Shown here: piece after piece, positions 353 through 45,146 of the stretch
Numbering within the stretch: the first letter of the stretch is position 1
Layout of the letters: the number at the start of each line of letters is the position of its first letter
Assembly: GCF_037042905.1 (NCBI RefSeq)
Contig: NC_087255.1
Location: 12,028,001 to 12,092,000, forward strand
Direction of reading: 5' to 3'
DNA length: 64,000 nt
DNA from: Lytechinus pictus
Taxonomy: Eukaryota
Made by a program: the position numbers and the translations under genes
Notes under the pieces: generated by a model
Databases searched by the model: none
The model's input: only the letters and a program-made list of their open reading frames with translations
What the model was told of the DNA's origin: nothing

Positions 353-1353
353 ACAGGAAAATAGTGGCCTGTGAAATTATGAGCCTCCCAGGCCTTGCCC
401 CCTCAACTGCGGATGAAGAGCTTGGCCCAGTCAGTTTTTTTTTAATATTTAGTTTACATTACAAGTAGATTCTGGCTTGGAGAAGGTGGCCTGTGAATTA
501 TGTACCTACCGGGCTTTGCTCCTTAAACTGTAGGTGAACGGCCATGCCCATTTAGATTATGTGTCCTAAGTTTGTAGTTTACATAGTTTTAGTAGATTCT
601 GGCTGGGAGATGGTGGCCTGTGAATTATGTGCCTACCGGGCTTTGCCCTTTAAACTGTAGGTGAACGGCCATGCCCATTTAGATTATGTGTCCTAAGTTT
701 GTAGTTTACATAGTTTTAGTAGATTCTGGCTGGGAGATGGTGGCCTGTGAATTATGTGCCTACCGGGCTTTGCCCCTTAAACTGTAGGTGAACGGCCATG
801 CCCATTTAGATTATGTGTCCTAAGTATGTAGTTTATATAGTTTTAGTAGATTCTGGCTGGGAGATGGTGGCCTGTGAATTATGTGCCTACCTGGCTTGCC
901 CCTTAAACTGTAGGCGAACGGCCATGCCCATTTAGATTATGTTCTGTATTAAGTTTGTAGTTAACATAGATTTAGTAAATTCTGGTAGGGAGATGGTGGC
1001 CTGTGTATTATGTGCCTACCAGGCTTTGCCCTTTAAACTGTAGGTGAACGACCAGGCCCAGTCAGATTTTTATTTTTATTTCATTAAATAGTTGACACAA
1101 CACACAGTTTTAGTAGATTCTGGCTGGCAGATGGTGGCCTGTGAATTATGTGCCTATCGGGCTTTGCCCCTTAAACTGTAGGTGAACGGTCAGGCCCAGT
1201 CAGATTTTTATTTTTATTTCATTAAATAGTTGACACAACACACAGTTTTAGTAGATTCTGGCTGGCAGATGGTGGCCTGTGAATTATGTGCCTATCGGGC
1301 TTTGCCCCTTAAACTGTAGGTGAACGGTCAGGCCTGGTCAGATTTTTGATGTT

Positions 1354-1465
1354 TTAAGGTCAAGTCCACTCCAGAAAATGTTGATTTGAGTAAGTAGAGA
1401 AAAATCAAACTAGCATAACGCTGACAATTTCATCAAAATTGGATGTAAATAATGACATTTTCGCT
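1354..1465 (+). mobile_element. Left-end fragment of TTAA-flanked (Kolobok-like) MITE
   Basis: TTAAGGTCAAGTCCAC..AGAAAATGTTGATTTGA..AAAATCAAACT..CATAAC.CTGA.AATTTCATCAAAAT.GGATGTAAA matches 36200-36330. Confidence 0.75.
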
Positions 1466-1481
1466 ACCTTAGGGTAATCTG

Positions 1482-1638
1482 GGGGGCGTTTCATGAAAGG
1501 ACTTGTCGGACGTTTTATCCGACAAGTCCCATTTTATCCGACAGTTACGATAGTAACAGTACCTCTCAGCCAATCAACATCAGAGAAAGATGTCAGATCT
1601 GACAACTTGTCGGATGAAAATGTTGATGAAACACTCCT
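1482..1638. mobile_element. Short MITE with CWG flanks (PIF/Harbinger-like)
   Basis: TIRs GGGGGCGTTTCATGAA / TTGATGAAACACTCCT; flanks CTG and CAG; internal inverted CTTGTCGGA / TCCGACAAG. Confidence 0.75.
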
Positions 1639-2003
1639 CAGGTATCACTTTGGCCTGTGAATTATGTGCCTACCAGGCTTTGCCCCTTAAACTGTAGGTG
1701 AACGACCAGGCCCAGTAAGGTTTATTAGTATATTTTTGTTGTTTACAAGGTTTTAGTGGATTCTGGCTGGGAGATGGTGGCCTGTGAATTATGTGCCTAT
1801 CGGGCTTTGCCCCTTAAACTGAAGGTGAACGGCCATGCCCAGTTAGATTATATGTTCTAAGTTTGTAGTTTACATATTTTTAGTAGATTCCTGCTGGGAG
1901 ATTGTGGCCTCTGAATTATGTGCCTACAGGGCTTTGCCCCTTAAACTGTAGGTGAACGGCCATGCCCAGTTAGATTATGTTTCTTAAGTTTGTAGTTTAC
2001 ATA

Positions 2004-2508
2004 TATGCTTTTCACACTGCATTTCCTTAACCCCATACTATCCTTAACCCCGGACTATCCTTAACCCCATACTATCTTTTTTCGATTCACACTGTCTTTC
2101 TTAACCCTATACTATTTGCTTAGCCGGGGTTAACGCCTTAACCCCGGGCAATCACACAGCTCATAAATATTGATGATTTTACCATACAGAGCGCGATTAT
2201 CGTGCAATTTCGACTTCTGTGATTGGCTAATGCTTAGCCCCACTTATGCTTAGCCCTGTTTCGTTTCACACTGCATCTCTTGGCACCGCAATTGTGCTAG
2301 CACCACAATAAGCCGGCTAACCTTGCTTTTTTGCAGGGCCAGATAGTACCGTACTATTTACCGTGCTAGCCCACTTTGCTAAAACGTAGTGTGAAAACGA
2401 AGTGGGCTAAGCTTAACCCCGGGAAATTGGTGGGGCTAAGACCCCCCCCCCCCTTAGCCCCACCAATTTCCTGGGGTTAAGGAAAAAAAGTGCAGTGTGA
2501 AAAGCATA
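2004..2508. mobile_element. 505-bp MITE with 3-bp TSD ATA (Harbinger-like)
   Basis: Perfect 18-bp TIR TATGCTTTTCACACTGCA / TGCAGTGTGAAAAGCATA. ATA is duplicated (2001-2003 and 2509-2511), and removing the element restores the satellite unit TTTACATAGTTTTAG. Confidence 0.9.
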
Positions 2509-2871
2509 ATAGTTTTAGTAGATTCTGGCTGGGAGATGGTGGCCTGTGAATTATGTGCCTACCGGGCTTTGCCCCTTAAACTGTAGGTGAACGGCCAGGC
2601 CCAGTCAGATTTGTATTTGTTTGCTTTGCCCCTTAAACTGTAGGTGAACGGCCAGGCCCAGTCAGATTTGTATTTGTTTATTAAATAGTTGACATAATAC
2701 ATAGTACTTTAAGTAGATTCTGGCTGGGAGATGGTGGCCTATCTATTATGTGCTTTTGCCTTTAAACTGTAGGTGAATGGCCAGTCCCAGTCAGTTTATA
2801 TTTTTGTAGTTTACATAGTTTTAGTGGATGCTGGCTGGGAGATGGTGGCCTGTGAATTATGTGCCTACCGG

Positions 2872-3406
2872 GTCGCTTTTATTGTATTTCTCGCCATTGT
2901 CTTTTTTTACCATGTTATTTCTTTTTTTCACCAAATTAGGTATTATTTGGTTGCCATGGCAATGGAATGAGAGTGTATTTATACATTAAGCAAAAACCAC
3001 TCCTATGTTTAACACCCTACAGGCAGGGAAAATGAAACAAAAAACAGATTCTACAACTTTTAATCAAAATTTTTACTTTTCTGGAGGAAAAAATAAGCCG
3101 TTACCATGGCAACGGGCTAATTGGAACCAATTTGATGATCTTAAGTAATTTTTAATTTCATTTGTATTTAATTGGAACCCTGAAATCAATCTATTGGCTA
3201 ATTTATATCATGTTTATCTACCATTTACAGGGCAATACATACCATTTTTGATAAATTAATCCGTTGCCATGGCAACGGTCGAAGACGGCATTTATAAATT
3301 TGGCAACAAGCAGATTCGTAATCAGCACCCTAAAAATAGGGGGATAAGCACAAAAAATCAGATTCTACAGAAAATTTTTGGAATTTTTACTACTTGCCGC
3401 CTACTA
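2872..3406. mobile_element. One-ended DNA-transposon fragment inserted in the satellite; superfamily uncertain
   Basis: Interrupts the unit between CTACCGGG and TTTGCCCC with no TSD. It ends GATTCGTAATCAGCACCC...CTTGCCGCCTACTA and contains three GTTRCCATGGCAAY motifs. Confidence 0.55.
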
Positions 3407-3679
3407 TTTGCCCCTTAAACTGTAGGTGAACGGCCATGCCCATTTAGATTATATGTTCTGTTTTAAGTTTGTAGTATACATAGTTTGAGTGTTTTGGTAG
3501 ATTTTTGGCCTGTGAATTATGTGCCTATGGGGCTTTGCCCCTAAACTGTAGGTGAAAGGCTATGCCCAGTCAGATTACTTTATGTTCTGTTTTAAGTTTG
3601 TAGTATACATAGTTTTAGTAGATTCTTGCTGGGAGATGATGGCCTGTTAATTCTGTACCTACTGGACTTTGCCCCTTGG

Positions 3680-4448
3680 CAACGGCAGTATCTTCAACAT
3701 TGAAATCTTAACCAGGGTTAAGTTTTTTGAAATGTCATAAAAAGTGAGAAAGTAAGACCCTATTTCTCATTACATTTTTAAAAACTAGTTTACTGGAAAC
3801 CAGTTTGGAAGATCGCTTTGCTAGCATTCCCATTTGATCACCCGAAAGTGGTTTTCAAAATCACTTCACGTAAAGCGATCTTGTTGCTATGGGAACGCTC
3901 TCAGTTGGGTGACACGTTTCGCGCAAGATTTAAAAACACAGCTTAGGCATTCTACACACAGCGTGTGGAGTAGCATGCTCACAATGTATGAAGATCGCTT
4001 CCGGAGACCGGTTGTGTCCTCACTCTAGAACCAGTTTAACGAGGCAAAGCGATCTTAAAAACTACATCGCAAGCTGGTTTTATGAACTTGTTTAGAAGAT
4101 CACTTCCAGGATTGCTTCGATCGTTCTCATTAGATGTTAAACTAATTTCCACTATACTGGTTCCCAGTAAACTAGTTTTAGGAAGGTAGTGAGAACAATG
4201 TCCAAATGAATCTAGTTCACAAAGCTTAGACCTGAGGGTAATCAGGTATCACTGATCATTTTCCACAAGTTTCAGGTTGCATGATCGAGGTCAAAGGTCA
4301 ATTAAGGTCAATTAACTTAGTATTTTACTATCATATCGACAATGTTTTTTTGTGAATGATTATTTACCTTAATTGTTTTCAAAGTCTGAACTGCTGCTAT
4401 ATTGAATCGCATAATGCAGGGAAGACTGCGGGAGGCATTCCACTTGTT
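3680..4448 (+). mobile_element. 5'-truncated HINE-type element, copy B, with a nested MITE
   Basis: Same family as 1-352. Ends GGAGGCATTCCACTTGTT and contains AGGTCAAAGGTCA at 4288-4300. Confidence 0.55.
3756..4202 (+). mobile_element. MITE of the AAAACTAGTTTACTGG family, copy 1
   Basis: Imperfect TIR GACC.T.TTTCTCA / TGAGAACAATGTC with subterminal AAAACTAGTTTACTGG / CCAGTAAACTAGTTTT. Colinear with 18022-18447 (inverted) and 48865-49282. Confidence 0.85.
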
Positions 4449-4540
4449 CATATTTTATTCTCAATAAAATAATCGTTGTTTAAACTGTTAAAACAACTAC
4501 TGCAAGGTTCATATAGTAAACAGCATTGCATTAGATTTTA

Positions 4541-4625
4541 AACAGTGTTTATACTGTGTAATATCAGCACTACACTTTAAATGTTAAACAGTGTTTATAC
4601 TGTGTAATATCAGCACTACACCTTA
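4541..4625. repeat. 46-bp tandem duplication
   Basis: AACAGTGTTTATACTGTGTAATATCAGCACTACAC occurs at 4541 and 4587. Confidence 0.85.
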
Positions 4626-6222
4626 AATTTTAAATAAACCTTGATTGGCTGTGGTTAACACTCATTTAACAATTCGATTTAGCTTTAATTTCTTGCTGAC
4701 TCTTGATTTATTTTTTTCTGTGAACAATAAATCATAAGAGGCTTGAACCAAGGCTAGACGCAAACAGGTGTCCCAACACTCCGATATCATTCAATTATTG
4801 TATTCATCTCTCGCTTCCCTTTATATAATCATATCTCTGACAAGTTGATAATATTCTATACTTTCCCTTGCCATGTGGTATATTCCAGTCTTGTGCTGTA
4901 GCAGCCAGGGGCTGGCAATTGCCCTGATCTAAGTGGATCAAATATTCTTGTGAATTTGATCAAGTCGGTGCCTTCTATTGATAGGGTCTGTGTTTTCTTT
5001 GGTGCGTGTTGACATCGTCGAAGTGACTTGACCTTCTTTGTATGGATAACAGTCGATGATTAGCAGCCGTTGTAATGCACTTACGGTCCTTAAATGATAC
5101 TGCATTAATTTCCAAAATGCTGACTCTTCAAAATGATCTTGTATCTTGGTCAAATCAAGACAAGTCACAGAAACCTTAAATGTTTTGTCCGATACATTAC
5201 ATTTTGTGAGATGGTCCTTGAGATTATCGATGCATTTATTTCTTTAAAAAAAATGTAATTGATTATATTTCATTATTATGGTACTATTACATCAGAGTAC
5301 CCCTCTCCCATGTGTTCAGTGCTTTTTGTAGTAATGTATTAGAATGATTAATCCTTTAATTCTCCAATATAGGAAACAATAAAAATACAAAGCATAATAG
5401 ATTTCCTGCATAAATATCGTTTTGATGAAAAAAATGGTCTATAGTTTATCAGTATATTTCTTTCATTTTAGGTTTCTATCACAGGTTTCATTGTTAATGC
5501 AAAGTCACGGCTTATCAAATTGAATATTTGAACCAATAGCCTAAGTGCTAGGTTAATTGTAATTTGAAGAAAAATAATCAAGTGTTCAGTTCTCTGTCTT
5601 CACCTTTACCTAGAGCTGTCATATCTAACAAAATTTTCATCTTCATCAAAATGGCACATTGAGTATGATATTTATAATTCAAAACAGTAACTGTTACCTG
5701 CCAAAATTACGAAATGACCAGCCATGTCATTGAATTTAAAGATGTGCAGGCTCTCTAAATGATGGTGTCGCCTAATTTTATTATTAATGTAGAGAGGAAT
5801 GACAAGGAACAGGGGTATCTGGTTTTCCTGATGTGATTGTATTTTCACTATATCATTGTATTTTCAAAAGGATGAATCGTACATGCACCTGCTTTATAAA
5901 TGTCGGATTAACCCCAAAAAGGTGTTAAGATATATAAAATTAAATGATAGCTATTGCTACAATCCAGATACTCCATCACGACATGTCTTCTTCCAATATC
6001 TTTGAATTATTCGAGTGAAATTCAGTTACATAAAATGGTCAATACCAGTTGACCCTCCTTTTTTCCTAACCATTCCCAGAGTATGACCCTGTTGGCTGGC
6101 TCCTTTGCGAAATCTACGGCTGCACAGGTATTATATCACCTGCTACCATCCTGTCAAATTGCCCTCCAAAAATTTGGAAACTGTTTCGCCCCTCCAAAAC
6201 CTGGAGCGCTTTGAGGGACGTT

Positions 6223-6316
6223 ACCTGTCACGGCATGTATGTTATTGGTCATTAGTTCTTGGTAGAAAGTGGGATAGTGGACACCCCTCGCGGATACAAG
6301 GTGTTCTATGAGTCAT
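6223..6316. promoter_or_regulatory. Candidate cis-regulatory module, copy 1 of 2
   Basis: ACCTGTCA, TTATTGGTCATTAGTT, GGGATASTGGACA, AGGTGTT and TGAGTCAT occur in the same order as at 10081-10176. Confidence 0.5.
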
Positions 6317-6428
6317 CCAAGGTGATGGTGAAAACTGGTTCTGCTGTAACCTGATGAAAACAACTTGGTTCCTCCGAGGGAATACCACAGTGTGAGTAAA
6401 GTTTACGCCACTTGACAAAGGCAATCAG

Positions 6429-6568
6429 GGTCGCATTTCATGATACAAATAGTTTGTGATTCTCTCTGACTGTTAATGTTTTGAGCTACTAAAATTCTTG
6501 CATCTAATTGGCTTAGAGTAAATTTTGTCAGTGAAAATCAGCCACAAATTATTTTGTGAAATGCTCCC
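6429..6568. mobile_element. Degenerate CWG-type MITE
   Basis: Ends GCATTTCATGA / TTGTGAAATGC; internal ATTGGCT, as in 56373-56512. Confidence 0.5.
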
Positions 6569-7019
6569 TCGGGCTGTTCTAGTGAATTCTTTCTCCTCTT
6601 GTCAACTGTTTAGAGAAGCCTAGATAAAGCTTTGAAAATATTAACTACTGGAATTGGGTTATCTCTGTTCATAGCTTATTGAAATTTCAAAATTCAGTAG
6701 CAACAGGTTGAAATGAACGTTGTGTTACCTGCTTATATCCATAATTGCTTATATTTGGTAGCTAATGGATGTTAATGCATTGTTTTTCAGTAGGTTCAAT
6801 TTGTGTTCTTGAAGAGGAGGGGACTGTGATTTTGAACAGGAACATAATTGCATTATCTAGTTACTATAAGGAAATGATTTTATTTAAAATGTGTATCACT
6901 AGGTTCTGTCAACCCAGTGCTCTTTTTTTATTTGATAGAAATTTCAGTCTCTTTGAAATAGACAAGGTTTGTAAATAATAACATTAACAGGAGGAATCTC
7001 TGGATCTTTAAAGTCTAGT

Positions 7020-7785
7020 CATCACTTAAATTTGGTACCACAGAAGTTCACTTAAGTTTGGCACCACAGCAGTTTGCCTAAGTTTGGTAGCACAACAGTG
7101 CTCCTTAGTTTGGTAGCTTTGTTCACCTAAGGTGTGCACCACTGCAGTTTACTTAAGGTTGGAACCGCAGCCGTTCACCTAACTTTGGTAGCACAGCAGT
7201 TCACTTAACGGTTAGCAAGCAGCAGTTCACTTAAAGTTGGTGCCACATGAGTTCACTTAAGTTAGGTACCACACCAGTTCACCTAACTTTGGTACCACAG
7301 CAGTTCACTTAAGGTTGGAACCGCAGCAGTTCACCTAACTTTGGTAGCACAGCAGTTCACTTAAGGTGTGCACCACAGCAGTTCACTTAAGTTTAGTACC
7401 ACACCAGTTCACTTAAGGCTGGCAATGCAGCAGTTTACTTAACATTAGCAATGCAGCAGTTCAACTAAAATTGGTACCACCGCAGTTCACTCAAGGTTGG
7501 TACCACAGCAGTTCAATTTAGGTTAGCACCACAGCAGTTCACGTAAAGTTTTTGCACTTCACTTAAGTTTGATACCTGAACAGTTGATAATAATATGTTC
7601 CATTTGTATAGTGTAGCTACTAATAATTGCATGTACTCTACTGCGCTTGATACTTGGTACAATATTATTATTGAAATCAGTTCAGTTAATGTTGTTACCA
7701 CAGCAGTTCACTTAGGTTTAGTACCACAGTGGTTCACTTAAGTTTGGTACCTAATTACTTCTCTTAAGGTTGGCACCACAGAAAT
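7020..7785. repeat. Minisatellite, 26-bp unit CAGCAGTTCACTTAAGTTTGGTACCA
   Basis: CAGCAGTTCAC recurs at 7298, 7324 and 7350. An AT-rich interruption lies at about 7580-7690. Confidence 0.92.
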
Positions 7786-7789
7786 TTGC

Positions 7790-9070
7790 TTTGAGTAGGC
7801 TCTAGTCAGCTAATGCCATTTGCTTCTTAATCTTTAGATCGCAGTGTTTTAGTGGATACTGATTAGTAAATGCTCATTTGCAGTCTCTGAGTGGGCCATG
7901 ACAAGTTAAAGGGGAATCCAACCCAAATAAAAACTTGTTTTTATAAGAAAAAGAAAAATCAGTCAAGTTGATACGTGAAAGTTTGAACAATATTGGACAA
8001 ACAACAAGAAAGTTATGAATTTTTAAAAGTTGTAAATATTGGTAATCACTATACCCATGGAGACTTCAAATTGGCCGCATATGGGATGTCATAGTGATGT
8101 AAGGCAAGGACTACTCTTCCATGTACTCCAATACATATTATGCCTAAAATGTCATTTTTCCCAAAAGTTTTATTTCAAATTATATTTTTCATTCATGAGG
8201 ACATAAAACAATATACTACCTGGATTATATTTAGATTGCTGCCCCAGGGGAATGGGTACTTAGGAGAAAACCACAAATCCCTGATAATAAAGTACATGGC
8301 CTATAGGAAAGTTGTCCTTGCCCCTTGTCATAATTTACTTACCCAGTTGCCAATTTGAAATCGACATACTATTAGTGATCTCAATTTTAAAGCAGCTATA
8401 ACTTTCTTATTGCTTGTCCGATTTCTTTCAAACTTTCGCCATTCTGTTTAATTTATTTTTCTCCTTCCCAACACAACATTTTATGGCCAAGGCTGGATTC
8501 CCCTTTAATGCCGTCTGCTTCTCAGTCGTAAGATAGCAGTCTTTGAGCGGATTCTGATCAAATAATGCCCTTTGCTTCTAAATCTTTAGGTAGCAGTCTT
8601 ACAGGGGGCTCTAATCAGTTAATGCCTTTTTGCTTCTAAATTATTAGCAGTCTTTGTGTGGGATCTGATCAGCTAATGCCCTTTGCTTCTAAATTTTTAG
8701 ATAGCAGTCTTTGAGTGGGCTCTGATCAGTAAATGCCCTTTTGCTTCTTTTTTATTGCAGTGTTTGATTTGGCCCTGATAAGTTATTTCCCTTCTATTTC
8801 TACACCTTTGATACATGTAGCAGTGTTTGAGTTGGCTGTTATCAGCTAATACCCTTTGCTTCTAAATTTTAACCTAACAGAGTCTAAGTGGGCTCTGATT
8901 GGTTAATGTCCTTTTGCATCCAAATTTTTAGATTTTAGCAGTCTTTAAGTGGGGTTAGTTAACTCTTTCCTTCTAAATCTTGATATAGCAGTCATTGAGT
9001 GGGCTCTGACCAATTAATGCCCTTCTGCTTCTAAATCTTTAGATAGCAGTCTTTGAGGGGGCTCTGATCA
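7790..9070. repeat. Tandem repeat, about 57-bp unit
   Basis: Unit TAGCAGTCTTTGAGTGGGCTCTGATCAG.TAATGCCCTTTGCTTCTAAAT; anchors at 8534, 8591, 8645 and 8702. Split by the MITE at 7910-8504. Confidence 0.9.
7910..8504. mobile_element. 595-bp MITE with TTAA TSD (Kolobok-like)
   Basis: TTAA|AGGGGAATCCA...TGGATTCCCCT|TTAA, inserted at the TTAA of the 57-bp repeat unit. Confidence 0.88.
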
Positions 9071-10080
9071 CTACTTCCAGGTGAATGTCCTGTATAATTT
9101 GAAAAGCTTACCACAATGAAATCGGAAAGTAGCTATTTGGAGATATTGAGAATAACTTGAAGATTCATTGCATATCTCCTGTGGGTATTGTGAGTAGCAC
9201 TGTCCTAGTTCAGCTTAAAATGAAAAAAAAAACAAGACGTTACAATTTATAGGAATTAATAAAAATAAATAAATAAATAAACCTTACATTAGATGTTTAA
9301 ACCATTTGAAAAAGTTTATTTTGTAGTGTTTGATTAAACTTCGTTGTTCAAACTAACAAGTACTGTCTTCATTGTTCAAACTAACAAGTACTGTAAGTTT
9401 CTTATAAAAACAGTTCTGTATAACATTTTAAACATCGTTTGTAGTTTTTATCTAAAAACAAGAGACATAGTAGTCATATATATGTATTAATATATAGTTT
9501 ATTCAAAATCATTATCATTATCATCATTATTATTATTTTAGAAATTGTATAACTGCATTTTCTGTGGCATTGATTACTAGTAATGGTTCTCTGTAGAATG
9601 GTACATTTTGGTGTCGATTCCATTGATAGCAGTTTTGTGAGTTGTAAATTTCTGTTTTCTTTGCATTAATCTTGCTGTGTGATTTCTGTTTCGGTGTCAT
9701 ATCTATAGAGAAAAAAGTATTCCCCATTTAAATATTTATGATAAGATTGTTTCCAGCATATTTCTTTTTGATTTCAGTGTCCTCATTCTTCTTTAAGAAA
9801 TGTTTGATAATTTTCTTGGGCTTTCAACTCTCAACGCATACATAGATTTCTATTCATGGAAATCATGAATGGAAACAATGAGTCACTACTTTGTAACCTT
9901 CCTCAAATATTCATGAATAGAACCTTTAGTATAGTTTCAACGTGCCAAGAACTTTTCTCTCTTGGGTAATCGCATGGAAGAAAAACTTTTCTCCATACGA
10001 TACTGCTAGGTAGGTTTTAGGGGGAAAAAAGAAAGGAATAGGTAGTTTATCACAAGAGAGCCCCTATTTGTAAGTATGTG

Positions 10081-10176
10081 ACCTGTCAATGTGTCTCTCT
10101 TATTGGTCATTAGTTATGTCCTGAGGGATACTGGACATCAAACCTTGTTTCCTATCTCAGGTGTTTGGTGAGTCAT
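10081..10176. promoter_or_regulatory. Candidate cis-regulatory module, copy 2 of 2
   Basis: Same five motifs and order as 6223-6316; two of the four spacer lengths are identical. Confidence 0.5.
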
Positions 10177-10651
10177 AGCCAGAGAATCTCATGAATACAT
10201 TCCGATACACCTAAGGATAGAAAGATGGACCCATCGCTAATCTTTATTAGTGAGCCAAGTTTACTGATTGATAGAGAGAAAAAGATTTGCTCATCTTAAC
10301 CGATACATGAACCTGAATCGCCTTTCCGATTAAAAGAAAGAAAATAGATGGATTTGATGAACGGAGACAGTTTTTTCTTGATACTTGAGGGATTTGGAAG
10401 TGCGTTTCCATTGGTCAGTACAGGTGCTTTCATTGATAGTATGGAATTTAGATCTATACGTGGATGTTTGGTTGAATTAGTCATCAGTAACTTCCTAAAG
10501 CTGTGCTTGTTTTTCTGATAGTTCATGTCCTTTAGAACTTGTTGGATATTCATTTCCAAAGATTACATTGGAAGTTCTGATGTAGAAAGAACGCAAAAGG
10601 TTGGTCTGAAAGAGGTGAAGACAGATAGAAGTAGGAGGGAGGGTCATTCAG

Positions 10652-10922
10652 GGGCCCGTCTTATAAAGAGTTCCAATTGATCCAATCAATCGTAACTCTA
10701 TGGAAATCCATCAGTGTCATAATTTTTTCTACAGGAAATTTGCAAAATGTGCTTTGTAAACAAAGGAGATCACACCAAATTGTCAAGAAATCAATGAATT
10801 TATAGATACACATTCATATCTAGAATCTTTTTTTAACAAACATGCATTTTATATGTTGACTTTGCTGGCTTTCCATAGTTGCGATTGATCCGATCAATCG
10901 CAACTCTTTGTAACACAGGCCC
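10652..10922. mobile_element. 271-bp CWG-flanked MITE
   Basis: TIR GGGCCCGTCTTATAAAGAG / CTCTTTGTAACACAGGCCC. An inverted copy lies at 62422-62694. Confidence 0.88.
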
Positions 10923-11846
10923 CTGGAGTCAGCCACCCTTGGTAAGAGGGAAATGACGAGTAAAATACATAATGATGAAAGCCACACTCTAAAAATGCAC
11001 CTACATGTACTAACAGCTCATGTCCTTAGGACTTGTTGGAAATACATATCCACATCAGACTCTAAAAAGGTTTCTAGTGTACTTCAAAGGTCGACCCAGC
11101 TTTCAGAAAACGAATAGAAGATACCAACTTTTATGTCTTGCATTTGACTAAATTTTGATTTATAATTTCTCTTCTTTCCTTATTGTTATTTTGACTTTGT
11201 TTTATCTACTGATTTATAAAAGGAGCTGAAACATTTGACGTTCAGCTTCCTGGCTTTATCATATAAAATATTTCGATTTGTTCAAATCAGTCTTGGCTAT
11301 GTAAACTAAGATTCAGCATCATTTTAAAATTAGTAGGAGAATGCAAGTACTGTCTCGATGCTGATTGGTCAAGTCAGGTCATGTGAACAGGCATTTATCC
11401 TCCCTCGAGATTAACTCTGGTGATGAATGTAAAGTTCTTTTGAAATGATTTGGTTAGTTGATGGATACTTTACAATGATATCAACCAATCATAAAAAAGT
11501 AAATATTGTTGAAATATTGCAGAAGTAAGATGTTTTCTTTTTGCTCCTCTATTTATTTCTTCTATTTCTAGTTATGGGAGATTATTTTCTTTTAAAGTTT
11601 TGACCTTTTGTCATCAGTTTTCTCAGGTGTGACTTAGCAAGTATTCCCCTTTTCAGAAACCAGCTTGTTTCTTTAGATTTAGTGGTAATAATGATTGAAT
11701 ATGATAATCACATTCTTTATCTTATATTTTATATCCACTCTTTATCTCAACTTGTATTCCATTCTTTATCTGACCTTTTATTCAATTTTTTCACTGTTTT
11801 ACAATCTATCTCTGAAGGAAAGTTCCCTAAACTGAGTTGACACCTG

Positions 11847-12005
11847 GTGGGTGTTTCATAAAGCTGTTCGTAAGTTAAGAGCAACTTTAAGAACGACTGG
11901 TGATCCTTTCTTGTGGTAATTGGCGATGGCTTAGCGCGTAAGAAAGGATCACCAGTCGTTCTTTAAGTCGCTCTTAACTTGCGAACAGCTTTATGAAACG
12001 GCCTC
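11847..12005. mobile_element. Near-fully palindromic (fold-back) CWG-flanked MITE
   Basis: Arms of about 65 bp: GTTTCATAAAGCTGTTCG...GGTGATCCTTTCTT / AAGAAAGGATCACC...CGAACAGCTTTATGAAAC. Confidence 0.88.
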
Positions 12006-13272
12006 CAGGAAAAGAGATCTCAGCAACCTAATGTCCATTATAAAAAAAAAGTTATTGGTAATCTTCAAACATGTGCCCTGTCCATGATTAAATCAACACA
12101 TACCATATAGCATCGACAGGTGAGAAAGCCACATGGAAAAAGAAGCAGAAAAATGAAGGATAATGTTCCATTTTGATAAATAATTCATTGTCTTTCACGC
12201 AGGTGACAGAGTCGATATCTAATTGTGATCATTTATCCCCTCTGCAGAAAGTGAACTTAAGCAAACCTATCCATACTGTATTAACAGGTGATGGTTTTTA
12301 CATCAAAGTGAATATTAAGAGTGAACCTTGATGAACTTGTTAGTAGTCAATAACAGGTGAATAAAACTCTCTTTTTAGTTTGAAGAGGGATGGATGTTCT
12401 TAGTTTCTTTGACAAATGTGGGCATGAGTCATTCGGTTGGAATTAATTCTACTTGTGTCACCTGTAAGGTAGCCTGAGAATGTATAGCAGGAATCGATGA
12501 CTTTGTACAGCAACCTACTTTACAAGTCTGACTCATCAAGTTCAAAAACTTTTCTTTTCTCTGTATGTTTCTCACATGCCCCCCTCTCTCTCTCTGTGTG
12601 TCTTTCCATCTAGCTACCTATCTATATATATATATACTTTCATGATTGTGGTTGCGTCATTAGCTAGTGTTTATGACATAACAATGATGTCCTCACTTAC
12701 GCAATGATATCTACAACCTGCGCGCGCCTCAAGTATGCTTTCATTAAGATAGTGATGCTTTTTTAACCTGCATGTTTCTATGACTACCATAATCATGAAT
12801 GCATCTATTATTTCCATATCTTGTCACTGTGAGCTTTATTGTATCCCTGAAGAAGACGTGGGATTTACGTCAAAAATTTGGACTTGGAAATAAACTCTGT
12901 TGGAACTAGTATAATGCATTACCTCTTTGCCTCTTTTATATATATAATATGTAATATATATATTTTAAAAGAAAACAGAGCATAGCTCTAAAAAATCAGA
13001 GGCAAAGTATCACTGACAAAAATGTCAACTTTGTCTTTCATTTGAGCTGAGCTCAGTTTTCTTTAAAAATCTATGACTTTGATTTGTTTACGGCACTCTT
13101 CTACCACTCGTGTGTATAATATTAACTTGATTTTATATAGCTTATCTAGATTCTTGTATTCTTTAGTTGCCAAGCAACTTGAATTGTATTTTTATAATAT
13201 AAAGCTGTCTCCCATGCCCCAGTGTGTCCTGCTCCTTATACTTTACTGTAAAGTTGACTTCTTCCTTTATAT

Positions 13273-18021: not shown

Positions 18022-18447
18022 CTAAAACTAGTTTACTGGAAACTAGTTTAACACGTAGTGAGAACGGTCGAAGCGGTCTTGGAAGCGATCTTCCAAACCA
18101 GTTTGGAAAACCACCGCGCGATGTAGTTTTCAAGATCGCTTTGCCTCGTTAAACTGGTTTTAGCGTAAGTGAGGACACAACCGTTCTTCGGAAGCGATCT
18201 TCGCACATTTTGAGCGCGCTACTCCACATGACAGGTGTAGAATGCCTATGCTGCGGTTTCGAATTTCGCGCGAAACCTATCACCTACTGAGAGCGTTTCC
18301 ATAGCAACAAGAGCGCTTTACGTGAAGTGATTTTGAAAACCACTTTCGTGTGATCAAGTGGGAACGCTAGCAAAGCGATCTTTCAAAGTGGTTTCCTGAA
18401 TCGGTTTCCAGTAAACTAGTTTTAGAAAGCATAATGAGAACGGCCTC
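18022..18447 (-). mobile_element. MITE of the AAAACTAGTTTACTGG family, copy 2 (inverted)
   Basis: Reverse complement of 3756-4202; ends TGAGAACGGCCTC. Confidence 0.85.
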
Positions 18448-41421: not shown

Positions 41422-43497
41422 TATTTATTTATTTATTTATTTATTTCTGATATTTTGACAGGGTAGCCCATTCACCAATAAGTAGTGGTCTTCCATGGGG
41501 CCCTGAATAACAATCAACATATTTACAAAATGCATAACGTATGTACAGAATGTTACAGCATTAAGATTCACATTAGGATTTGAATGTAAAACGAAACATT
41601 AACAAACTTAGCAGCAAACAAAACGCAGACGGGCACTCGTTTGACGTATAATAAAATATCAATAAATCAAATTAATTAAGAAGGAAATCTTGAAAATACT
41701 GATAATATACACCAAATCATCAAGGTCATGCTAACACAAAATAAGCACAACAGTGGATGTTCCGCAAGTTATTTATAAATTACAAGTTCTTTTAAACATT
41801 CTCTTAAATGAAATGACAAATGGAGCTGTTCTAATTGAATTATCAAGCTTATTCCATTCAAATATTGAAGATACGATTGGACTACACTTATAACAATCAG
41901 TGCGAAACTTGGGCACGCGTAAATATCCACTGTCTCTCTGTCTGGTATGATGTTCATGTACATCATTTGGATTGGTTAAGTTTACCTGAAGGTAAGAAGG
42001 TGCTAAATTATGAACACATTTAAATATCATCAAAACGTGACTGAGCTCAAATCGTTTGTCTAGTGTCATCCATTTAAGACTTGTGAACAAATCAGCCGAC
42101 GGTGTGTCGTATGTCTTGTTCAATATAATTCTTGCAGCCCTCTTCTGAATTTTTTGCAGCTTAATTGTATGGGATTGAAATCTATTCGACCATACAGCAG
42201 AACAGTAATCAAATCTCGGCAACACTAAACTGTTATAAAGCAACTTTAAGGACTGCACAGGCAAAAAACTTTTCGCTCTCTTTATTATGCCAATGCTTTT
42301 CTGAGTAAGTTTACATACATTTTCAATTTGTTTTGACCATTTCAGTTCTTCATCTATCAAAACTCCTAAGCATTTGGTGAATTGAACTCTATTTATCAAA
42401 TCACCGTTTAACGAAATCGTGAAAGAATCTATTTTCCTGAGATTAGCACGAGAACCTATTATCATGACACAAGTTTTTTCAGTGTTGAGGACGAGCTGAT
42501 TATCTTTAATCCATGCCATGACCTTGTTTAATGCAACAGTTAATTTTTCTTCCAAAACTGTCGCATCATTCGCACTGACGGTAAGTGTCGTGTCGTCAGC
42601 GTACATATCTATAATACCTTCATGAATACATTCAGGTAAACTATTAACATATATTGAAAATAAAAGGGGACCTAGAATTGACCCTTGTGGCACGCCTAAT
42701 TTGACGATTGAAGGGTGCGATTTGGCTCCTTTGAATTGTGTCACTTGTTGTCGATCAAATAAATATGATTTGAACCAAGTGATAGTCCTCTTACTACAAC
42801 CAATGCAAGTTAATTTCTTTAAAAGCAGCTCATGGTCCACGGTATCAAAGGCCTTCCGAAGATCTATGAACGCAACTCCAGAAATTAAATTGTTATCAAT
42901 GTTTAACGTCCACTGATTTACAAGTTTTGCAAGGGCAGTAGTTGTTGAATGCATAGGCCGAAAACCAGATTGATTTGGGTGTAATAAATCATTCACGTCC
43001 AAGAATTCACTTAGCTGTTGGTGAACAGCCCTTTCTAAAATTTTACTCACGATTGGTAATATAGAAATTGGGCGGTAATTATTCAGCGAAGACATATCAC
43101 CAGATTTAAATATTGGTACTACCCGAGCCTTTTTCCATTCACGAGGAACAACTCCAGTAGTAAGGGATTTGTTAATAATATCACAAAGGGACTCTGCGAT
43201 AACATTTTTTGTCATCTTTAAAAGTTTGCAGCTGACATGATCTTCCCCAGTTGATTTATCTATACTCAGATTATCAAACTGTTTCAAAACAAAATCTCTA
43301 GTAATCAACTCTAGCTCAAATTGATAGTGAATTGAACCAACATTTGTATCATCTTCTACTTGAACTCTCTGTTGAGACGTATCCCTTTGCAGGTCCTTAG
43401 TAATATTAGTAGCATTTGAAATGAAAAATTCATTAAATGCTTCAGCAATATTTGCATTGCCCGACACATCTGTTCCATCTACGTTTATTAATTTATT
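41422..43497 (-). mobile_element. 5'-truncated non-LTR retrotransposon of the L2/Crack/CR1 group
   Basis: RT ORF, a ~325-bp 3' UTR ending in a CAGGGCCCCATGGAAGA...GGCTACCCTG stem, and an (AAAT)n tail at 41422-41446. Confidence 0.93.
41773..43467 (-). CDS. LINE ORF2 fragment: reverse transcriptase plus C-terminus; endonuclease domain missing
   Basis: 564 uninterrupted codons with YRPISILP, QSGFR, DLRKAFDTVDH, GVPQGSILGPLLF, YADD and KCLGV motifs. The GTG start is an artefact of truncation. Confidence 0.95.
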   Translation of the reverse strand: MSGNANIAEAFNEFFISNATNITKDLQRDTSQQRVQVEDDTNVGSIHYQFELELITRDFVLKQFDNLSIDKSTGEDHVSCKLLKMTKNVIAESLCDIINKSLTTGVVPREWKKARVVPIFKSGDMSSLNNYRPISILPIVSKILERAVHQQLSEFLDVNDLLHPNQSGFRPMHSTTTALAKLVNQWTLNIDNNLISGVAFIDLRKAFDTVDHELLLKKLTCIGCSKRTITWFKSYLFDRQQVTQFKGAKSHPSIVKLGVPQGSILGPLLFSIYVNSLPECIHEGIIDMYADDTTLTVSANDATVLEEKLTVALNKVMAWIKDNQLVLNTEKTCVMIIGSRANLRKIDSFTISLNGDLINRVQFTKCLGVLIDEELKWSKQIENVCKLTQKSIGIIKRAKSFLPVQSLKLLYNSLVLPRFDYCSAVWSNRFQSHTIKLQKIQKRAARIILNKTYDTPSADLFTSLKWMTLDKRFELSHVLMIFKCVHNLAPSYLQVNLTNPNDVHEHHTRQRDSGYLRVPKFRTDCYKCSPIVSSIFEWNKLDNSIRTAPFVISFKRMFKRTCNL

Positions 43498-45146
43498 AGA
43501 GCATTTTAGAGCATTTTAAGTTCTATTGTGGTTAGTTTCAATTCATTCACCTTTAAAAGATACTTATATTATATTGGATGGTTCAGAATGGAATACCAGA
43601 AATATTCCAGAAAAGTTCTGGTTGCTACTATGGAAAGCCAAATTAAACACAAATCTCTAACAATTTTAATTTATCAGCACATGTTGCCCTCAATTAAACT
43701 GTTGCAATTAACATCTAAAATACAAAAAGCAAAAGATGTTCAAAGTTCATGATTGTGGAAAAAAAAAACTTTTTCACATAACATTTCAAATGTTTTTTTT
43801 TCACCAATAAAATATGAGGAATTAACACAGTAAAATAATTAAAAAAACAATGTATTCACAAGGTTTAAACATTTTTGGCTTCCCATAAGTTTAGCAAAGA
43901 CATAGACCATGGACTTCAAAATAAAGACAATATTATATCTTTACAGTATGATTTAAAGTTTTCCCATCTCTGCTTTCAGATACAGAGAATTAAAAATGAT
44001 GGTGCCTCATTGTAAGGGGGGGAGAGACATCAAAAAGTTTTCTGTTTTTCATCCCAACTCCCTTACATCTGCTGTACGCTCACTGCAAAACTAGATTCTT
44101 GATTACACCAGATCTATGAATTATTGATTGAATGATGATATGTAGTTGATATATGAAACAAGAGGCTGTTATAGTTGATGAATAAAGTAAAGGTAGTTCA
44201 TATATTTTGTGATGAGTAAGCAGACTCACCTGTTGGGATGTATAGAGAACCACCTGTTGGATGCGGAATATCCAATATCCCTATCAGTATGCTGTTAGCA
44301 TCTCAGAGATAGGCCTCCATGTAATACCAGGAATCTGCTGATTTACATTATCACCAATGAAATACAAGAAACAAAACGAATGATGGTGAACTGTACAGAG
44401 TCGTAAAGACATTAGCTCTTTGTGGGATCGTCGGAGTAAGATACCTTCTTGCGCTCAGGGTGAGATGTGTAATGGCTTCCGCTCTTGCATAGGTGTGAAG
44501 AATAAATGAATTGTGATGGATGAGTTCCATATCTTTTAGTTCTCGGAAACGGCTCAGGTACTTCGTCGGTCGGTCTTCATTCAAATGTGGCTTATGAACT
44601 CGGGTTTGAACTTGACTGAAGGTGTTTGGTATTGGAAATCTTGCCCTGTTCAAACCTGTTTGGATCAACATAAAAACAAATTTGCTGATTAAGTCTGTTG
44701 ATGGTCTTCTATCTACTTCTTTTCTTAATAGCACTTTGAAACATAATGTACAAAGTGCTTTATAAATTTTGTGTATTATTATTATTCATTTGATCATAAT
44801 CGTTCATATTGATCGATGAAACATTGAAATAAGCAATTGAATAAACATTGAAATAAGCAATTGAATAGGGACGGGAAAATGAAAAGTTAAAATGGTTGCT
44901 GTGCTGGTAGTGATAATAAAATAACTTTTGATTGCATTTCTTGTGGAATACTGAGAAGGTTTTGATATAGATCTACCTGTTCCACATCTGATATTGATAC
45001 CTCTCTCTACCTAATCTACCCCCCCCCTCTGCCTGGTGAACTTTGGTTTACCTGCTATATTCCTTCCATTCTTACCCCAAGGTATAAGCTGGTATATGCA
45101 CACCAAAATCAATGTTTCTGGTAACAGGTGCAACATAGACAAATAC

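What the first reader, a model, noticed from the sequence alone, without database searches (positions are those of the whole stretch)
6223..10176. Duplicated ~95-bp module: five motifs conserved, spacers scrambled
Seen: 6223-6316 and 10081-10176 share, in order, ACCTGTCA - 11 nt - TTATTGGTCATTAGTT (16/16 identical) - GGGATASTGGACA (12/13) - AGGTGTT - 3 nt - TGAGTCAT. The spacers and flanks do not align, and there is no TIR, TSD or tail. Known motif matches: TGACAGGT (TALE class, Meis/TGIF), CCAAT (NF-Y), CTAATG (homeodomain), AGGTGT (T-box/ZEB) and TGAGTCA (AP-1). Inference: an old local duplication kept by selection on binding sites and spacing, i.e. a shadow-enhancer pair that displays its own grammar. 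This is the strongest unexplained structure in the window.
Basis: partly seen in the sequence, partly recalled or inferred. Interest (0 to 1): 0.72.

Follow-up and report, generated by a model that had tools for sequence, protein, structure and literature searches.

The report
Unique paired noncoding module, likely regulatory
Two ~185-base noncoding stretches 3.9 kb apart share six short, almost identical blocks in the same order while everything between the blocks is randomised; the pair occurs nowhere else in this 812-Mb genome and is most simply a duplicated protein-binding (enhancer-type) element, but no activity, target gene or deep conservation could be shown.

Summary
The five blocks sit exactly where stated, and I found a sixth block about 75 nt downstream in both copies. 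Block positions match at 64 of 67; everything else matches at 32%, close to random.

- **Not chance within this window.** A chained-block log-odds score gives 60.8 bits against a simulated maximum of 46, so E is about 4e-5 to 1e-4 per window. That still means about 10 chance cases per 250,000 windows, so chance is not fully excluded at scan scale.
- **Not a transposon.** BLAST, gapped patterns and a sequence profile find only these two copies in the genome.
- **Not a known or structured RNA.** Rfam gives nothing and the consensus folding term is only -2 to -3 kcal/mol.
- **Not coding.** Frames break between the copies and neither ORF has a homologue.
- **Not an assembly artefact.** DNA contigs of a second, about 5% diverged taxon label run through both copies at single-copy depth. 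The stretch around copy A appears to be the least diverged part.
- **No transcript evidence.** Two putative RNA runs have no contig on either module.

Best reading (confidence 0.5): an old local duplicate of a cis-regulatory module kept by selection on binding sites. "Shadow enhancer pair" is plausible but untested. It would be a new member of a known kind, of modest interest.

The parts
6220..6406 (+). Module copy A, blocks B1-B6: 6223-6230, 6242-6257, 6271-6283, 6299-6305, 6309-6316, 6392-6406
   Evidence: Sequence read. HSPs and chain. Single copy in the genome. Local GC peak of 0.47. It lies in the stretch 5989-6404, which appears to be the least diverged part against the second taxon label.
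10078..10264 (+). Module copy B, blocks B1-B6: 10081-10088, 10100-10115, 10125-10137, 10159-10165, 10169-10176, 10250-10264
   Evidence: Sequence read. HSPs and chain. Single copy in the genome. Covered by a single-copy DNA contig of the second taxon label (record 28).
6992..7817 (.). 26-bp satellite array between the two copies (later filling, not part of the module)
   Evidence: Repeat families D1 and D2.
7782..9080 (.). 57/111-bp satellite array between the copies, interrupted by a high-copy foldback element at about 7906-8508
   Evidence: Families D3-D6. Inverted self-match 7906-8141 against 8508-8284. Summed contig depth 20,000-870,000 at 7901-8608, against about 45 for single-copy DNA.
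9250..9544 (.). Short repeat with inverted ends (MITE-like) between the copies
   Evidence: read laying flags skipped repeats at 9250-9289 and 9498-9544. Inverted repeat I5.

Best explanation
The two ~185-nt stretches are paralogous copies of one noncoding DNA element made by an old local duplication. Removing the satellites and MITEs that later filled the gap would shrink the 3.86 kb between them to roughly 1.2 kb.

Neutral positions have since been randomised by substitutions and small indels. Six short blocks of 7-16 nt, their order and their approximate spacing have been held by purifying selection.

The most likely reason is that the blocks are binding sites for sequence-specific DNA-binding proteins, so each copy is a cis-regulatory module (an enhancer, or possibly a promoter-proximal or boundary element). 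Several blocks read like common consensus sites. This comes from memory and was not tested:
- TGAGTCA, bZIP/AP-1
- TGACAG, TALE homeodomain
- AGGTGT, T-box
- CCAAT plus a TAAT core

**Shown:** homology, mosaic conservation, uniqueness in the genome, presence of both loci in a second taxon, and absence of coding or structured-RNA signals.

**Inferred:** selection on binding sites, regulatory activity, and a shared target gene.
For: - **Order and spacing.** Six collinear blocks in the same order and orientation, with net spacing exactly conserved from B2 to B6.
- **Chance.** E is about 4e-5 to 1e-4 per window, and the reversed-sequence control gives no comparable clean chain.
- **Clustering of matches.** 64/67 in blocks against 32% elsewhere, permutation p<1e-5.
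- **Uniqueness.** Only two copies in 812 Mb by 16-mer, gapped pattern, BLAST and profile. The third exact 16-mer, on C13, has no other blocks above the background seen at 27 control loci.
- **Not RNA.** No Rfam family at E<=10 on either module. Folds are no better than shuffles, and the consensus folding term is -2 to -3 kcal/mol.
- **Not coding.** Frames are not open in both copies and neither ORF tested has a homologue.
- **Second taxon.** Single-copy DNA contigs span both loci. Divergence appears to be about 2.2% in 5989-6404 against about 8.0% just upstream (Fisher p=2e-4), with 5-12% in the other contigs.
- **Literature.** Short, high-identity patches (median 18 bp) are what duplicated shadow enhancers retain in Drosophila (preprint PMC13345019).
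Against: - There are no functional data of any kind: no accessibility, reporter or expression data.
- No candidate target gene was found. The only recognised coding sequence in the window is a LINE reverse transcriptase, and no homeobox gene lies on this contig.
- With only two sequences, perfect blocks with random spacers is also exactly what a chance chain of words looks like. The expected number of chance cases over 250,000 windows is about 10.
- The divergence contrast around copy A rests on my reading of how a truncated table was cut, and the compared taxon is too close (about 5%) to resolve individual blocks.
- There is no extra homotypic clustering of the motifs around the modules.
Confidence: 0.5

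Rival explanations
1. Chance. An exact 16-mer repeat is expected about once per 64-kb window. Here a few further short words happen to line up near it, and a reader scanning very many windows picked the most striking case.
For: A lenient chain statistic is not significant (observed 47, null maxima 38-50). Local Smith-Waterman gives an extrapolated E of about 0.7 per window. The better statistic still predicts about 10 such cases per 250,000 windows and about 0.15 per genome for pairs within 10 kb. Perfect blocks with random spacers are what chance chains look like.
Against: E is about 4e-5 to 1e-4 for this window. There is no clean chance chain above about 53 bits in the reversed-sequence control. 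B1, B2 and B6 lie on exactly the same diagonal. The stretch around copy A appears less diverged than its flanks in a second taxon, which is independent of the paralogue match. BLAST gave E=1.5e-5 in an 8 x 12 kb search space.
Confidence: 0.12
2. The blocks act at the RNA level. The two stretches would be paralogous pieces of a noncoding transcript or of alternative first exons or UTRs, with short protein- or RNA-binding motifs. Block 6, which starts with GTGAG, would be a conserved 5' splice donor.
For: Block 6 starts with GTGAG in both copies, preceded by AGT or TTA. Unstructured RNA motifs would also give blocks with free spacers. The RNA runs examined were few, and their RNA label is only a guess.
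Against: No contig of the two putative RNA runs lies on either module; their contigs lie only on the high-copy repeats. There is no Rfam hit and no conserved structure on either strand. The 8 nt conserved just beyond the GTGAG, at what would be intron positions +8 to +15, are not typical of a splice donor.
Confidence: 0.13
3. A neutral relic of a mobile element. The two stretches would be either the two LTRs of a dead LTR retrotransposon (direct repeats 3.9 kb apart) or two old insertions of one extinct family.
For: They are direct repeats in the same orientation at an LTR-like distance. The interval is full of repeats.
Against: No other copy exists in the genome by any search. There is no TIR or TSD. 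The interval holds satellites and MITEs, and a 70-aa stop-free stretch scan found nothing protein-like there; no gag/pol search was made. Neutral decay would be uniform, whereas matches are clustered with p<1e-5.
Confidence: 0.04
4. A duplicated small protein-coding exon. On the - strand, B5 gives ATG followed by Thr-His. On the + strand, the B3-B5 indel of +6 nt keeps the frame, which ends at the TGA in B5.
For: In copy A one + frame is open from 6087 to 6308 and one - frame from 6424 to 6242. The B3-to-B4 indel is a multiple of three, and the single B3 mismatch gives a conservative change in either strand's frame (my reading).
Against: Copy B has stops or frameshifts in every such frame: the indels of -4 and -2 are not multiples of 3. 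The spacers show no amino-acid similarity. The + ORF has no homologue in 5.8 billion clustered proteins and the - ORF has none in 1.84 billion representatives. There is no Pfam hit for the + strand stretch.
Confidence: 0.02

Closest known systems
Shadow (redundant) enhancers that arose by duplication of an existing enhancer
   Same: Two nearby noncoding elements share short, near-perfect patches and little else. In Drosophila, 13.3% of shadow sets show such enhancer-body homology, with a median aligned length of 18 bp at 93% identity. Duplication signatures of any kind are found in 18.3% of fly sets and 33.9% of mouse sets (preprint PMC13345019).
   Different: Those sets are defined by measured activity and a common target gene. 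Here activity, target and expression are all unknown. Six ordered blocks with exactly compensated spacing is also more than the single short hit typical of that survey.
Duplicated conserved non-coding elements (dCNEs) of vertebrates
   Same: Both are paralogous noncoding elements that keep core sequence long after duplication and are read as cis-regulatory modules. The term and its use appear in PMC1896008 and PMC2781166, which were listed but not read. The rest of this comparison is from my own knowledge.
   Different: dCNEs are longer and are conserved across vertebrate classes. They sit beside paralogous developmental genes that arose by whole-genome duplication. This pair is tandem (3.9 kb apart), sits in an invertebrate, has no known gene partner, and has no demonstrated deep conservation.
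Sea urchin cis-regulatory modules found by interspecific sequence footprinting (Strongylocentrotus versus Lytechinus comparisons; from my own knowledge)
   Same: Both show patches of conserved sequence of about 10-20 nt, set in DNA that no longer aligns and in which indels are common. Such patches are taken as transcription-factor sites and tested by reporter injection.
   Different: Here the footprint is between paralogues within one genome, not between orthologues, and no reporter test exists.
LTR pair of a decayed retrotransposon
   Same: Direct repeats a few kb apart.
   Different: The pair is single-locus with no family. The interval holds no long open frame. Conservation is mosaic, not uniform.

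Membership tests
Duplication-born shadow enhancer pair | Sequence homology between the two elements beyond chance | tested here: met
   The chain score is 60.8 bits against a null maximum of 46, giving E of about 4e-5 to 1e-4 per window. The reversed-sequence control agrees.
Duplication-born shadow enhancer pair | Each element has enhancer activity or open chromatin | not testable with these tools
   No ATAC/DNase or reporter data can be reached with these tools.
Duplication-born shadow enhancer pair | Both act on the same target gene with overlapping expression | not testable with these tools
   No gene was recognised in the window. No homeobox gene lies on contig C11.
Conserved non-coding element | Preferential conservation in other species compared with flanking DNA | tested here: inconclusive
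   Contigs of a second taxon label cover both copies at single-copy depth. Substitutions appear to be about 2.2% in 5989-6404 against about 8% in 5651-5988. The per-base table was truncated, and the taxon is only about 5% diverged.
Transposable element or dispersed repeat family | Multiple copies in the genome | tested here: not met
   The exact 16-mer occurs 3 times, and 1-mismatch hits equal the reversed-pattern control. The three-block gapped pattern occurs twice. BLAST finds only self-hits. The profile R1 finds only the two copies, with the next hit at E=3.9.
Transposable element or dispersed repeat family | Terminal inverted repeats, target-site duplication, LTR structure or coding remnants | tested here: not met
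   No inverted repeat brackets either module. The interval contains no stop-free stretch of 70 aa or more that looks like a protein; it was not searched against gag/pol models.
Structured non-coding RNA gene | Match to a known RNA family | tested here: not met
   Rfam at gathering threshold gives 0 hits in the window. In E-value mode up to 10, nothing lies on either module.
Structured non-coding RNA gene | Stable secondary structure conserved between the copies | tested here: not met
   Fold z-scores are +2.5, -0.8, +0.85 and +0.83. The RNAalifold folding terms are -2.25 and -3.19 kcal/mol over 199 columns.
Structured non-coding RNA gene | Transcribed | tested here: inconclusive
   Two runs guessed to be RNA have no contig on either module. 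There are few runs, they are contigs only, and short or rare RNAs would be lost.
Protein-coding exon pair | Open frame kept in both copies, with protein homologues | tested here: not met
   Copy B is interrupted in all frames. No homologue was found for the + ORF or the - ORF, and there is no Pfam hit for the + strand stretch.

The most novel reading that the evidence does not exclude
The pair is a very old tandem duplicate of an invertebrate cis-regulatory element. It would be older than the saturation of neutral sites and therefore shared by distant sea urchins. Six binding sites and their net spacing would have been held independently in both copies, making it a natural paralogue footprint that shows directly which bases and which distances an enhancer needs.

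Alternatively, it could be a pair of boundary or tethering elements bracketing a block of satellites.
Probability: 0.2. Interest if true: 0.55.

Novelty: new member of a known kind. Interest (0 to 1): 0.3.

Why it matters
If the blocks really are selected binding sites, the two copies footprint each other. The 67 conserved bases and the compensated spacing (-4, +6, -2 nt, net 0 over 150 nt) give a ready-made set of motif and spacer mutants for a reporter test of enhancer grammar. Earlier notes of this scan call the organism a sea urchin, which I did not verify; zygote injection assays are routine in sea urchins. The pair would also add a case of enhancer birth by local duplication outside flies and mammals. 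As it stands it is an untested candidate in a stretch with no recognised gene, so its present value is modest.

Tried and rejected
- **High-copy or decayed TE.** Rejected.
- **Third genomic copy.** The exact 16-mer on C13 (L003) looked at first as if it shared GGGATA and TGGACA-like words. Against 27 control loci carrying 1-mismatch 16-mers it is ordinary, at 5 or fewer shared 6-mers.
- **A larger duplication unit.** The weak collinear matches 5368-5495 / 9248-9376 and 4473-4560 / 9369-9450 are not collinear with each other and fall in a MITE-like repeat. The flanks match at 33-35%.
- **Known or structured RNA.** Rejected.
- **Coding exon.** Rejected.
- **Fetching orthologous DNA through spurious ORFs.** No record was found.
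- **Homeobox neighbour.** None on contig C11.
- **Literature search for the block sequences.** No paper holds them.
- **Simple statistics.** The sum of exact 7-mers and local Smith-Waterman do not separate the module from chance. Only a log-odds chain with a junction penalty does.
- **Motif clustering and CpG.** There is no homotypic motif excess around the modules. There is no CpG island, only a local GC rise.
- **CACAGTG heptamer.** It occurs at 6386-6392 in copy A only and is not conserved, so I treated it as coincidence.
Full report
**1. The observation**

| Block | Sequence | Copy A | Copy B |
|---|---|---|---|
| B1 | ACCTGTCA | 6223-6230 | 10081-10088 |
| B2 | the 16-mer (16/16) | 6242-6257 | 10100-10115 |
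| B3 | GGGATA[G/C]TGGACA (12/13) | 6271-6283 | 10125-10137 |
| B4 | AGGTGTT | 6299-6305 | 10159-10165 |
| B5 | TGAGTCAT | 6309-6316 | 10169-10176 |
| B6 | GTGAGnnAAGTTTAC (13/15) | 6392-6406 | 10250-10264 |

- Both copies are on the + strand. The spacers (A/B) are 11/11, 13/9, 15/21 and 3/3 nt.
- B6 is new. A k-mer diagonal scan and an HSP chain found it. It follows a spacer of 75 nt in A and 73 nt in B.
- B1, B2 and B6 lie on the same diagonal (offset 3858). B3 lies at -4 and B4/B5 at +2. The three indels cancel, so B2-to-B6 is 150 nt in both copies.
- Outside the blocks identity is 42/132 (32%) even after MAFFT optimisation. Composition alone predicts 27%. The outer flanks match at 33-35%.

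**2. Is it more than chance?**

The answer depends on the statistic, and I report both results.

- An exact 16-mer repeat is expected about once in a 64-kb self-comparison.
- A chain score that simply sums exact 7-mers does not stand out: observed 47, maxima of 18 simulated windows 38-50. Local Smith-Waterman is also unimpressive.
- A log-odds chain scores matches in bits and charges 10.2 bits per junction. It gives 60.8 bits, or about 58 for the six core blocks.
- In 225 third-order Markov simulations of 16 kb the mean was 32.8 and the maximum 46.0 bits.
- Gumbel extrapolation gives E of about 4e-5 to 1e-4 per 64-kb window and about 0.15 for all same-strand pairs within 10 kb in the genome. 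It also gives about 10 per 250,000 windows.
- In a control on the real sequence (the window against its reversed, not complemented, self) every chain above about 53 bits was low-complexity CT/CA sequence or a mirror artefact.
- BLAST gave E=1.5e-5 in an 8 x 12 kb space.

I conclude that homology is very likely for this window. Because the finding was picked from a very large scan, I leave about 12% for coincidence.

**3. Mosaic versus uniform decay**

Given homology, the matches are far more clustered than uniform divergence allows. Fifty-nine matches lie in runs of 6 or more, against a permutation mean of 14 and a maximum of 56 in 100,000 permutations. A neutral old duplicate would not look like this. 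One caveat applies: with only two sequences, perfect blocks with random spacers is also the signature of a chance chain, so sections 2 and 3 are not independent.

**4. Not a repeat family**

- The genome is 812 Mb and the window is C11:12,028,001-12,092,000.
- The exact 16-mer occurs three times. One-mismatch hits (53) equal the reversed-pattern control (60).
- The B3-B4-B5 gapped pattern occurs only at the two sites, and the control gives 0.
- BLAST of 241 nt around each copy finds only itself at E<=10.
- A sequence-only covariance model built from the two copies scores them at 99 and 96 bits, and the next hit is at E=3.9. Only 150 of 9,634 first-look candidates were scored, so this is a lower bound.
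- The third 16-mer site, on C13, carries no more block words than 27 control loci.
- No inverted repeat or target-site duplication brackets either copy.

**5. Not RNA structure, not coding**

- Rfam finds nothing in the window at gathering threshold, and nothing on either module at E<=10.
- Single-sequence folds are no better than shuffles (z = +2.5, -0.8, +0.85, +0.83).
- The consensus folds of both strands have folding terms of only -2.25 and -3.19 kcal/mol over 199 columns, and they leave the conserved blocks unpaired.
- Some frames look suggestive in copy A: a + frame is open from 6087 to 6308, a - frame from 6424 to 6242, and the B3-B4 indel is +6 nt.
- Copy B is broken in all of these frames, because the other indels are -4 and -2.
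- The ORFs of copy A have no homologue, neither the + ORF in 5.8 billion clustered proteins nor the - ORF in 1.84 billion representatives. Pfam finds nothing on the + strand stretch.

**6. Reads**

- The run search returned two coded organisms.
- DNA contigs of organism B cover the whole 5.3 kb at single-copy depth of about 40-48. Record 21 covers 5651-6404 with 36 substitutions and no gap. Record 28 covers 9606-10647 with 50 substitutions and 13 gaps.
- Both loci therefore exist in a second taxon label about 5% diverged, so the pair is not an assembly artefact and predates that split.
- The table of differences was truncated, but 27 of record 21's 36 substitutions are listed at 5701-5988.
- If I read the truncation rule correctly, only 9 substitutions fall in 5989-6404. 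That is 2.2% against 8.0% (Fisher p=2e-4), while the other contigs show 4.8-11.6%.
- This points to constraint around copy A, but it is coarse and rests on an assumption.
- Two runs guessed to be RNA have contigs only on the high-copy repeats (6485-6661, 7547-7723, 7901-8608, 10556-10900) and none on either module. That gives no evidence of transcription, but it does not prove silence.

**7. Surroundings**

- The 3.86 kb between the copies is mostly later filling:
  - a 26-bp satellite at 6992-7817;
  - a 57/111-bp satellite at 7782-9080, split by a very high-copy foldback element at about 7906-8508;
  - a MITE-like repeat at 9250-9544.
- Without this filling the copies would be roughly 1.2 kb apart.
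- Both modules sit on local GC rises (0.47 and 0.40 against 0.28-0.34 in the flanks) without a CpG island.
- The window holds no recognisable gene apart from a LINE reverse transcriptase at 41776-43515 (-).
- None of the 117 homeodomain matches in the genome lies on contig C11.
- The flanks could not be fetched.
- Earlier notes of this scan call the genome a sea urchin, and one says Lytechinus pictus. I did not verify this.

**8. Explanation**

The best reading is an old local duplicate of a DNA-level protein-binding module in which the blocks are binding sites. It is a cis-regulatory module pair (confidence 0.5). The narrower claim of two shadow enhancers of one gene would be nearer 0.3.

The transcription-factor names (AP-1/bZIP for TGAGTCA, TALE for TGACAG, T-box for AGGTGT, CCAAT/TAAT in the 16-mer, a Fox-like GTTTAC in B6) are consensus resemblances from memory and not tests. 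The motifs show no additional clustering around the modules.

| Rival | Confidence |
|---|---|
| RNA-level motifs or alternative first exons, with B6 as splice donor | 0.13 |
| Chance | 0.12 |
| TE or LTR relic | 0.04 |
| Coding | 0.02 |
| Unassigned | remainder |

**9. Comparison with what is known**

- Enhancers born by duplication are a known kind. A 2026 preprint reports enhancer-body homology in 13.3% of fly shadow sets, with a median aligned length of 18 bp at 93% identity. It finds duplication signatures in 18.3% of fly sets and 33.9% of mouse sets (PMC13345019).
- Vertebrate duplicated CNEs are a related concept (papers listed but not read).
- This pair has the sequence signature of such elements. 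None of the functional features that define a shadow enhancer pair could be tested.
- I therefore file it as a candidate new member of a known kind.

**10. Verdict**

Interest is modest (0.3) until cross-species, chromatin or reporter data exist.

Noticed in passing
window 7906-8508: Foldback-type element with long inverted arms (7906-8141 against 8508-8284, 65% identity). It is inserted into the 57-nt satellite. The summed contig depth is 20,000-870,000 against about 45 for single-copy DNA, so it is a very high-copy MITE-like family.
   Followed up: partly
window 6992-7817 and 7782-9080: Two different satellite arrays lie back to back: about 30 units of 26 bp, then units of 57/111 bp. Contigs of the second taxon label cover the start of the 26-bp array (up to 7387) and part of the 57/111-bp array (8603-9210).
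   Followed up: partly
window 10651-10899: High-copy short element with inverted ends (10698-10719 / 10857-10878). Many contigs end at its borders or join there on opposite strands. The contig of the second taxon label stops aligning at 10647, so the insertion may be lineage-specific.
   Followed up: no
window 11843-12009: Long near-perfect hairpin: 70-nt arms, 91% complementary, 27-nt loop. It could be a MITE or a hairpin-RNA source.
   Followed up: no
window 41773-43467 (-): Open 564-aa ORF with a reverse-transcriptase domain (RVT_1, E=2.5e-39). This is a LINE copy whose RT frame is open, and it is the only recognisable coding sequence in the window.
   Followed up: partly
window 364-3725: Cluster of repeated units of about 300-400 nt, for example 487-835 against 1651-1999 and 848-1172 against 3360-3677. 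In addition, 3764-4162 recurs inverted at 18026-18440 at 82% identity.
   Followed up: no
L003 about 1501-1516 (G000:C13:21732677-21732692): The only other exact copy of the 16-mer in the genome. Its surroundings share no more block words than control loci, so it is a chance match.
   Followed up: yes
window 9398-10022: A contig from a run of the window's own organism label differs from the window at 22 positions and 11 gaps in 625 nt. This implies very high within-species polymorphism, which limits what a comparison at about 5% divergence can show.
   Followed up: no
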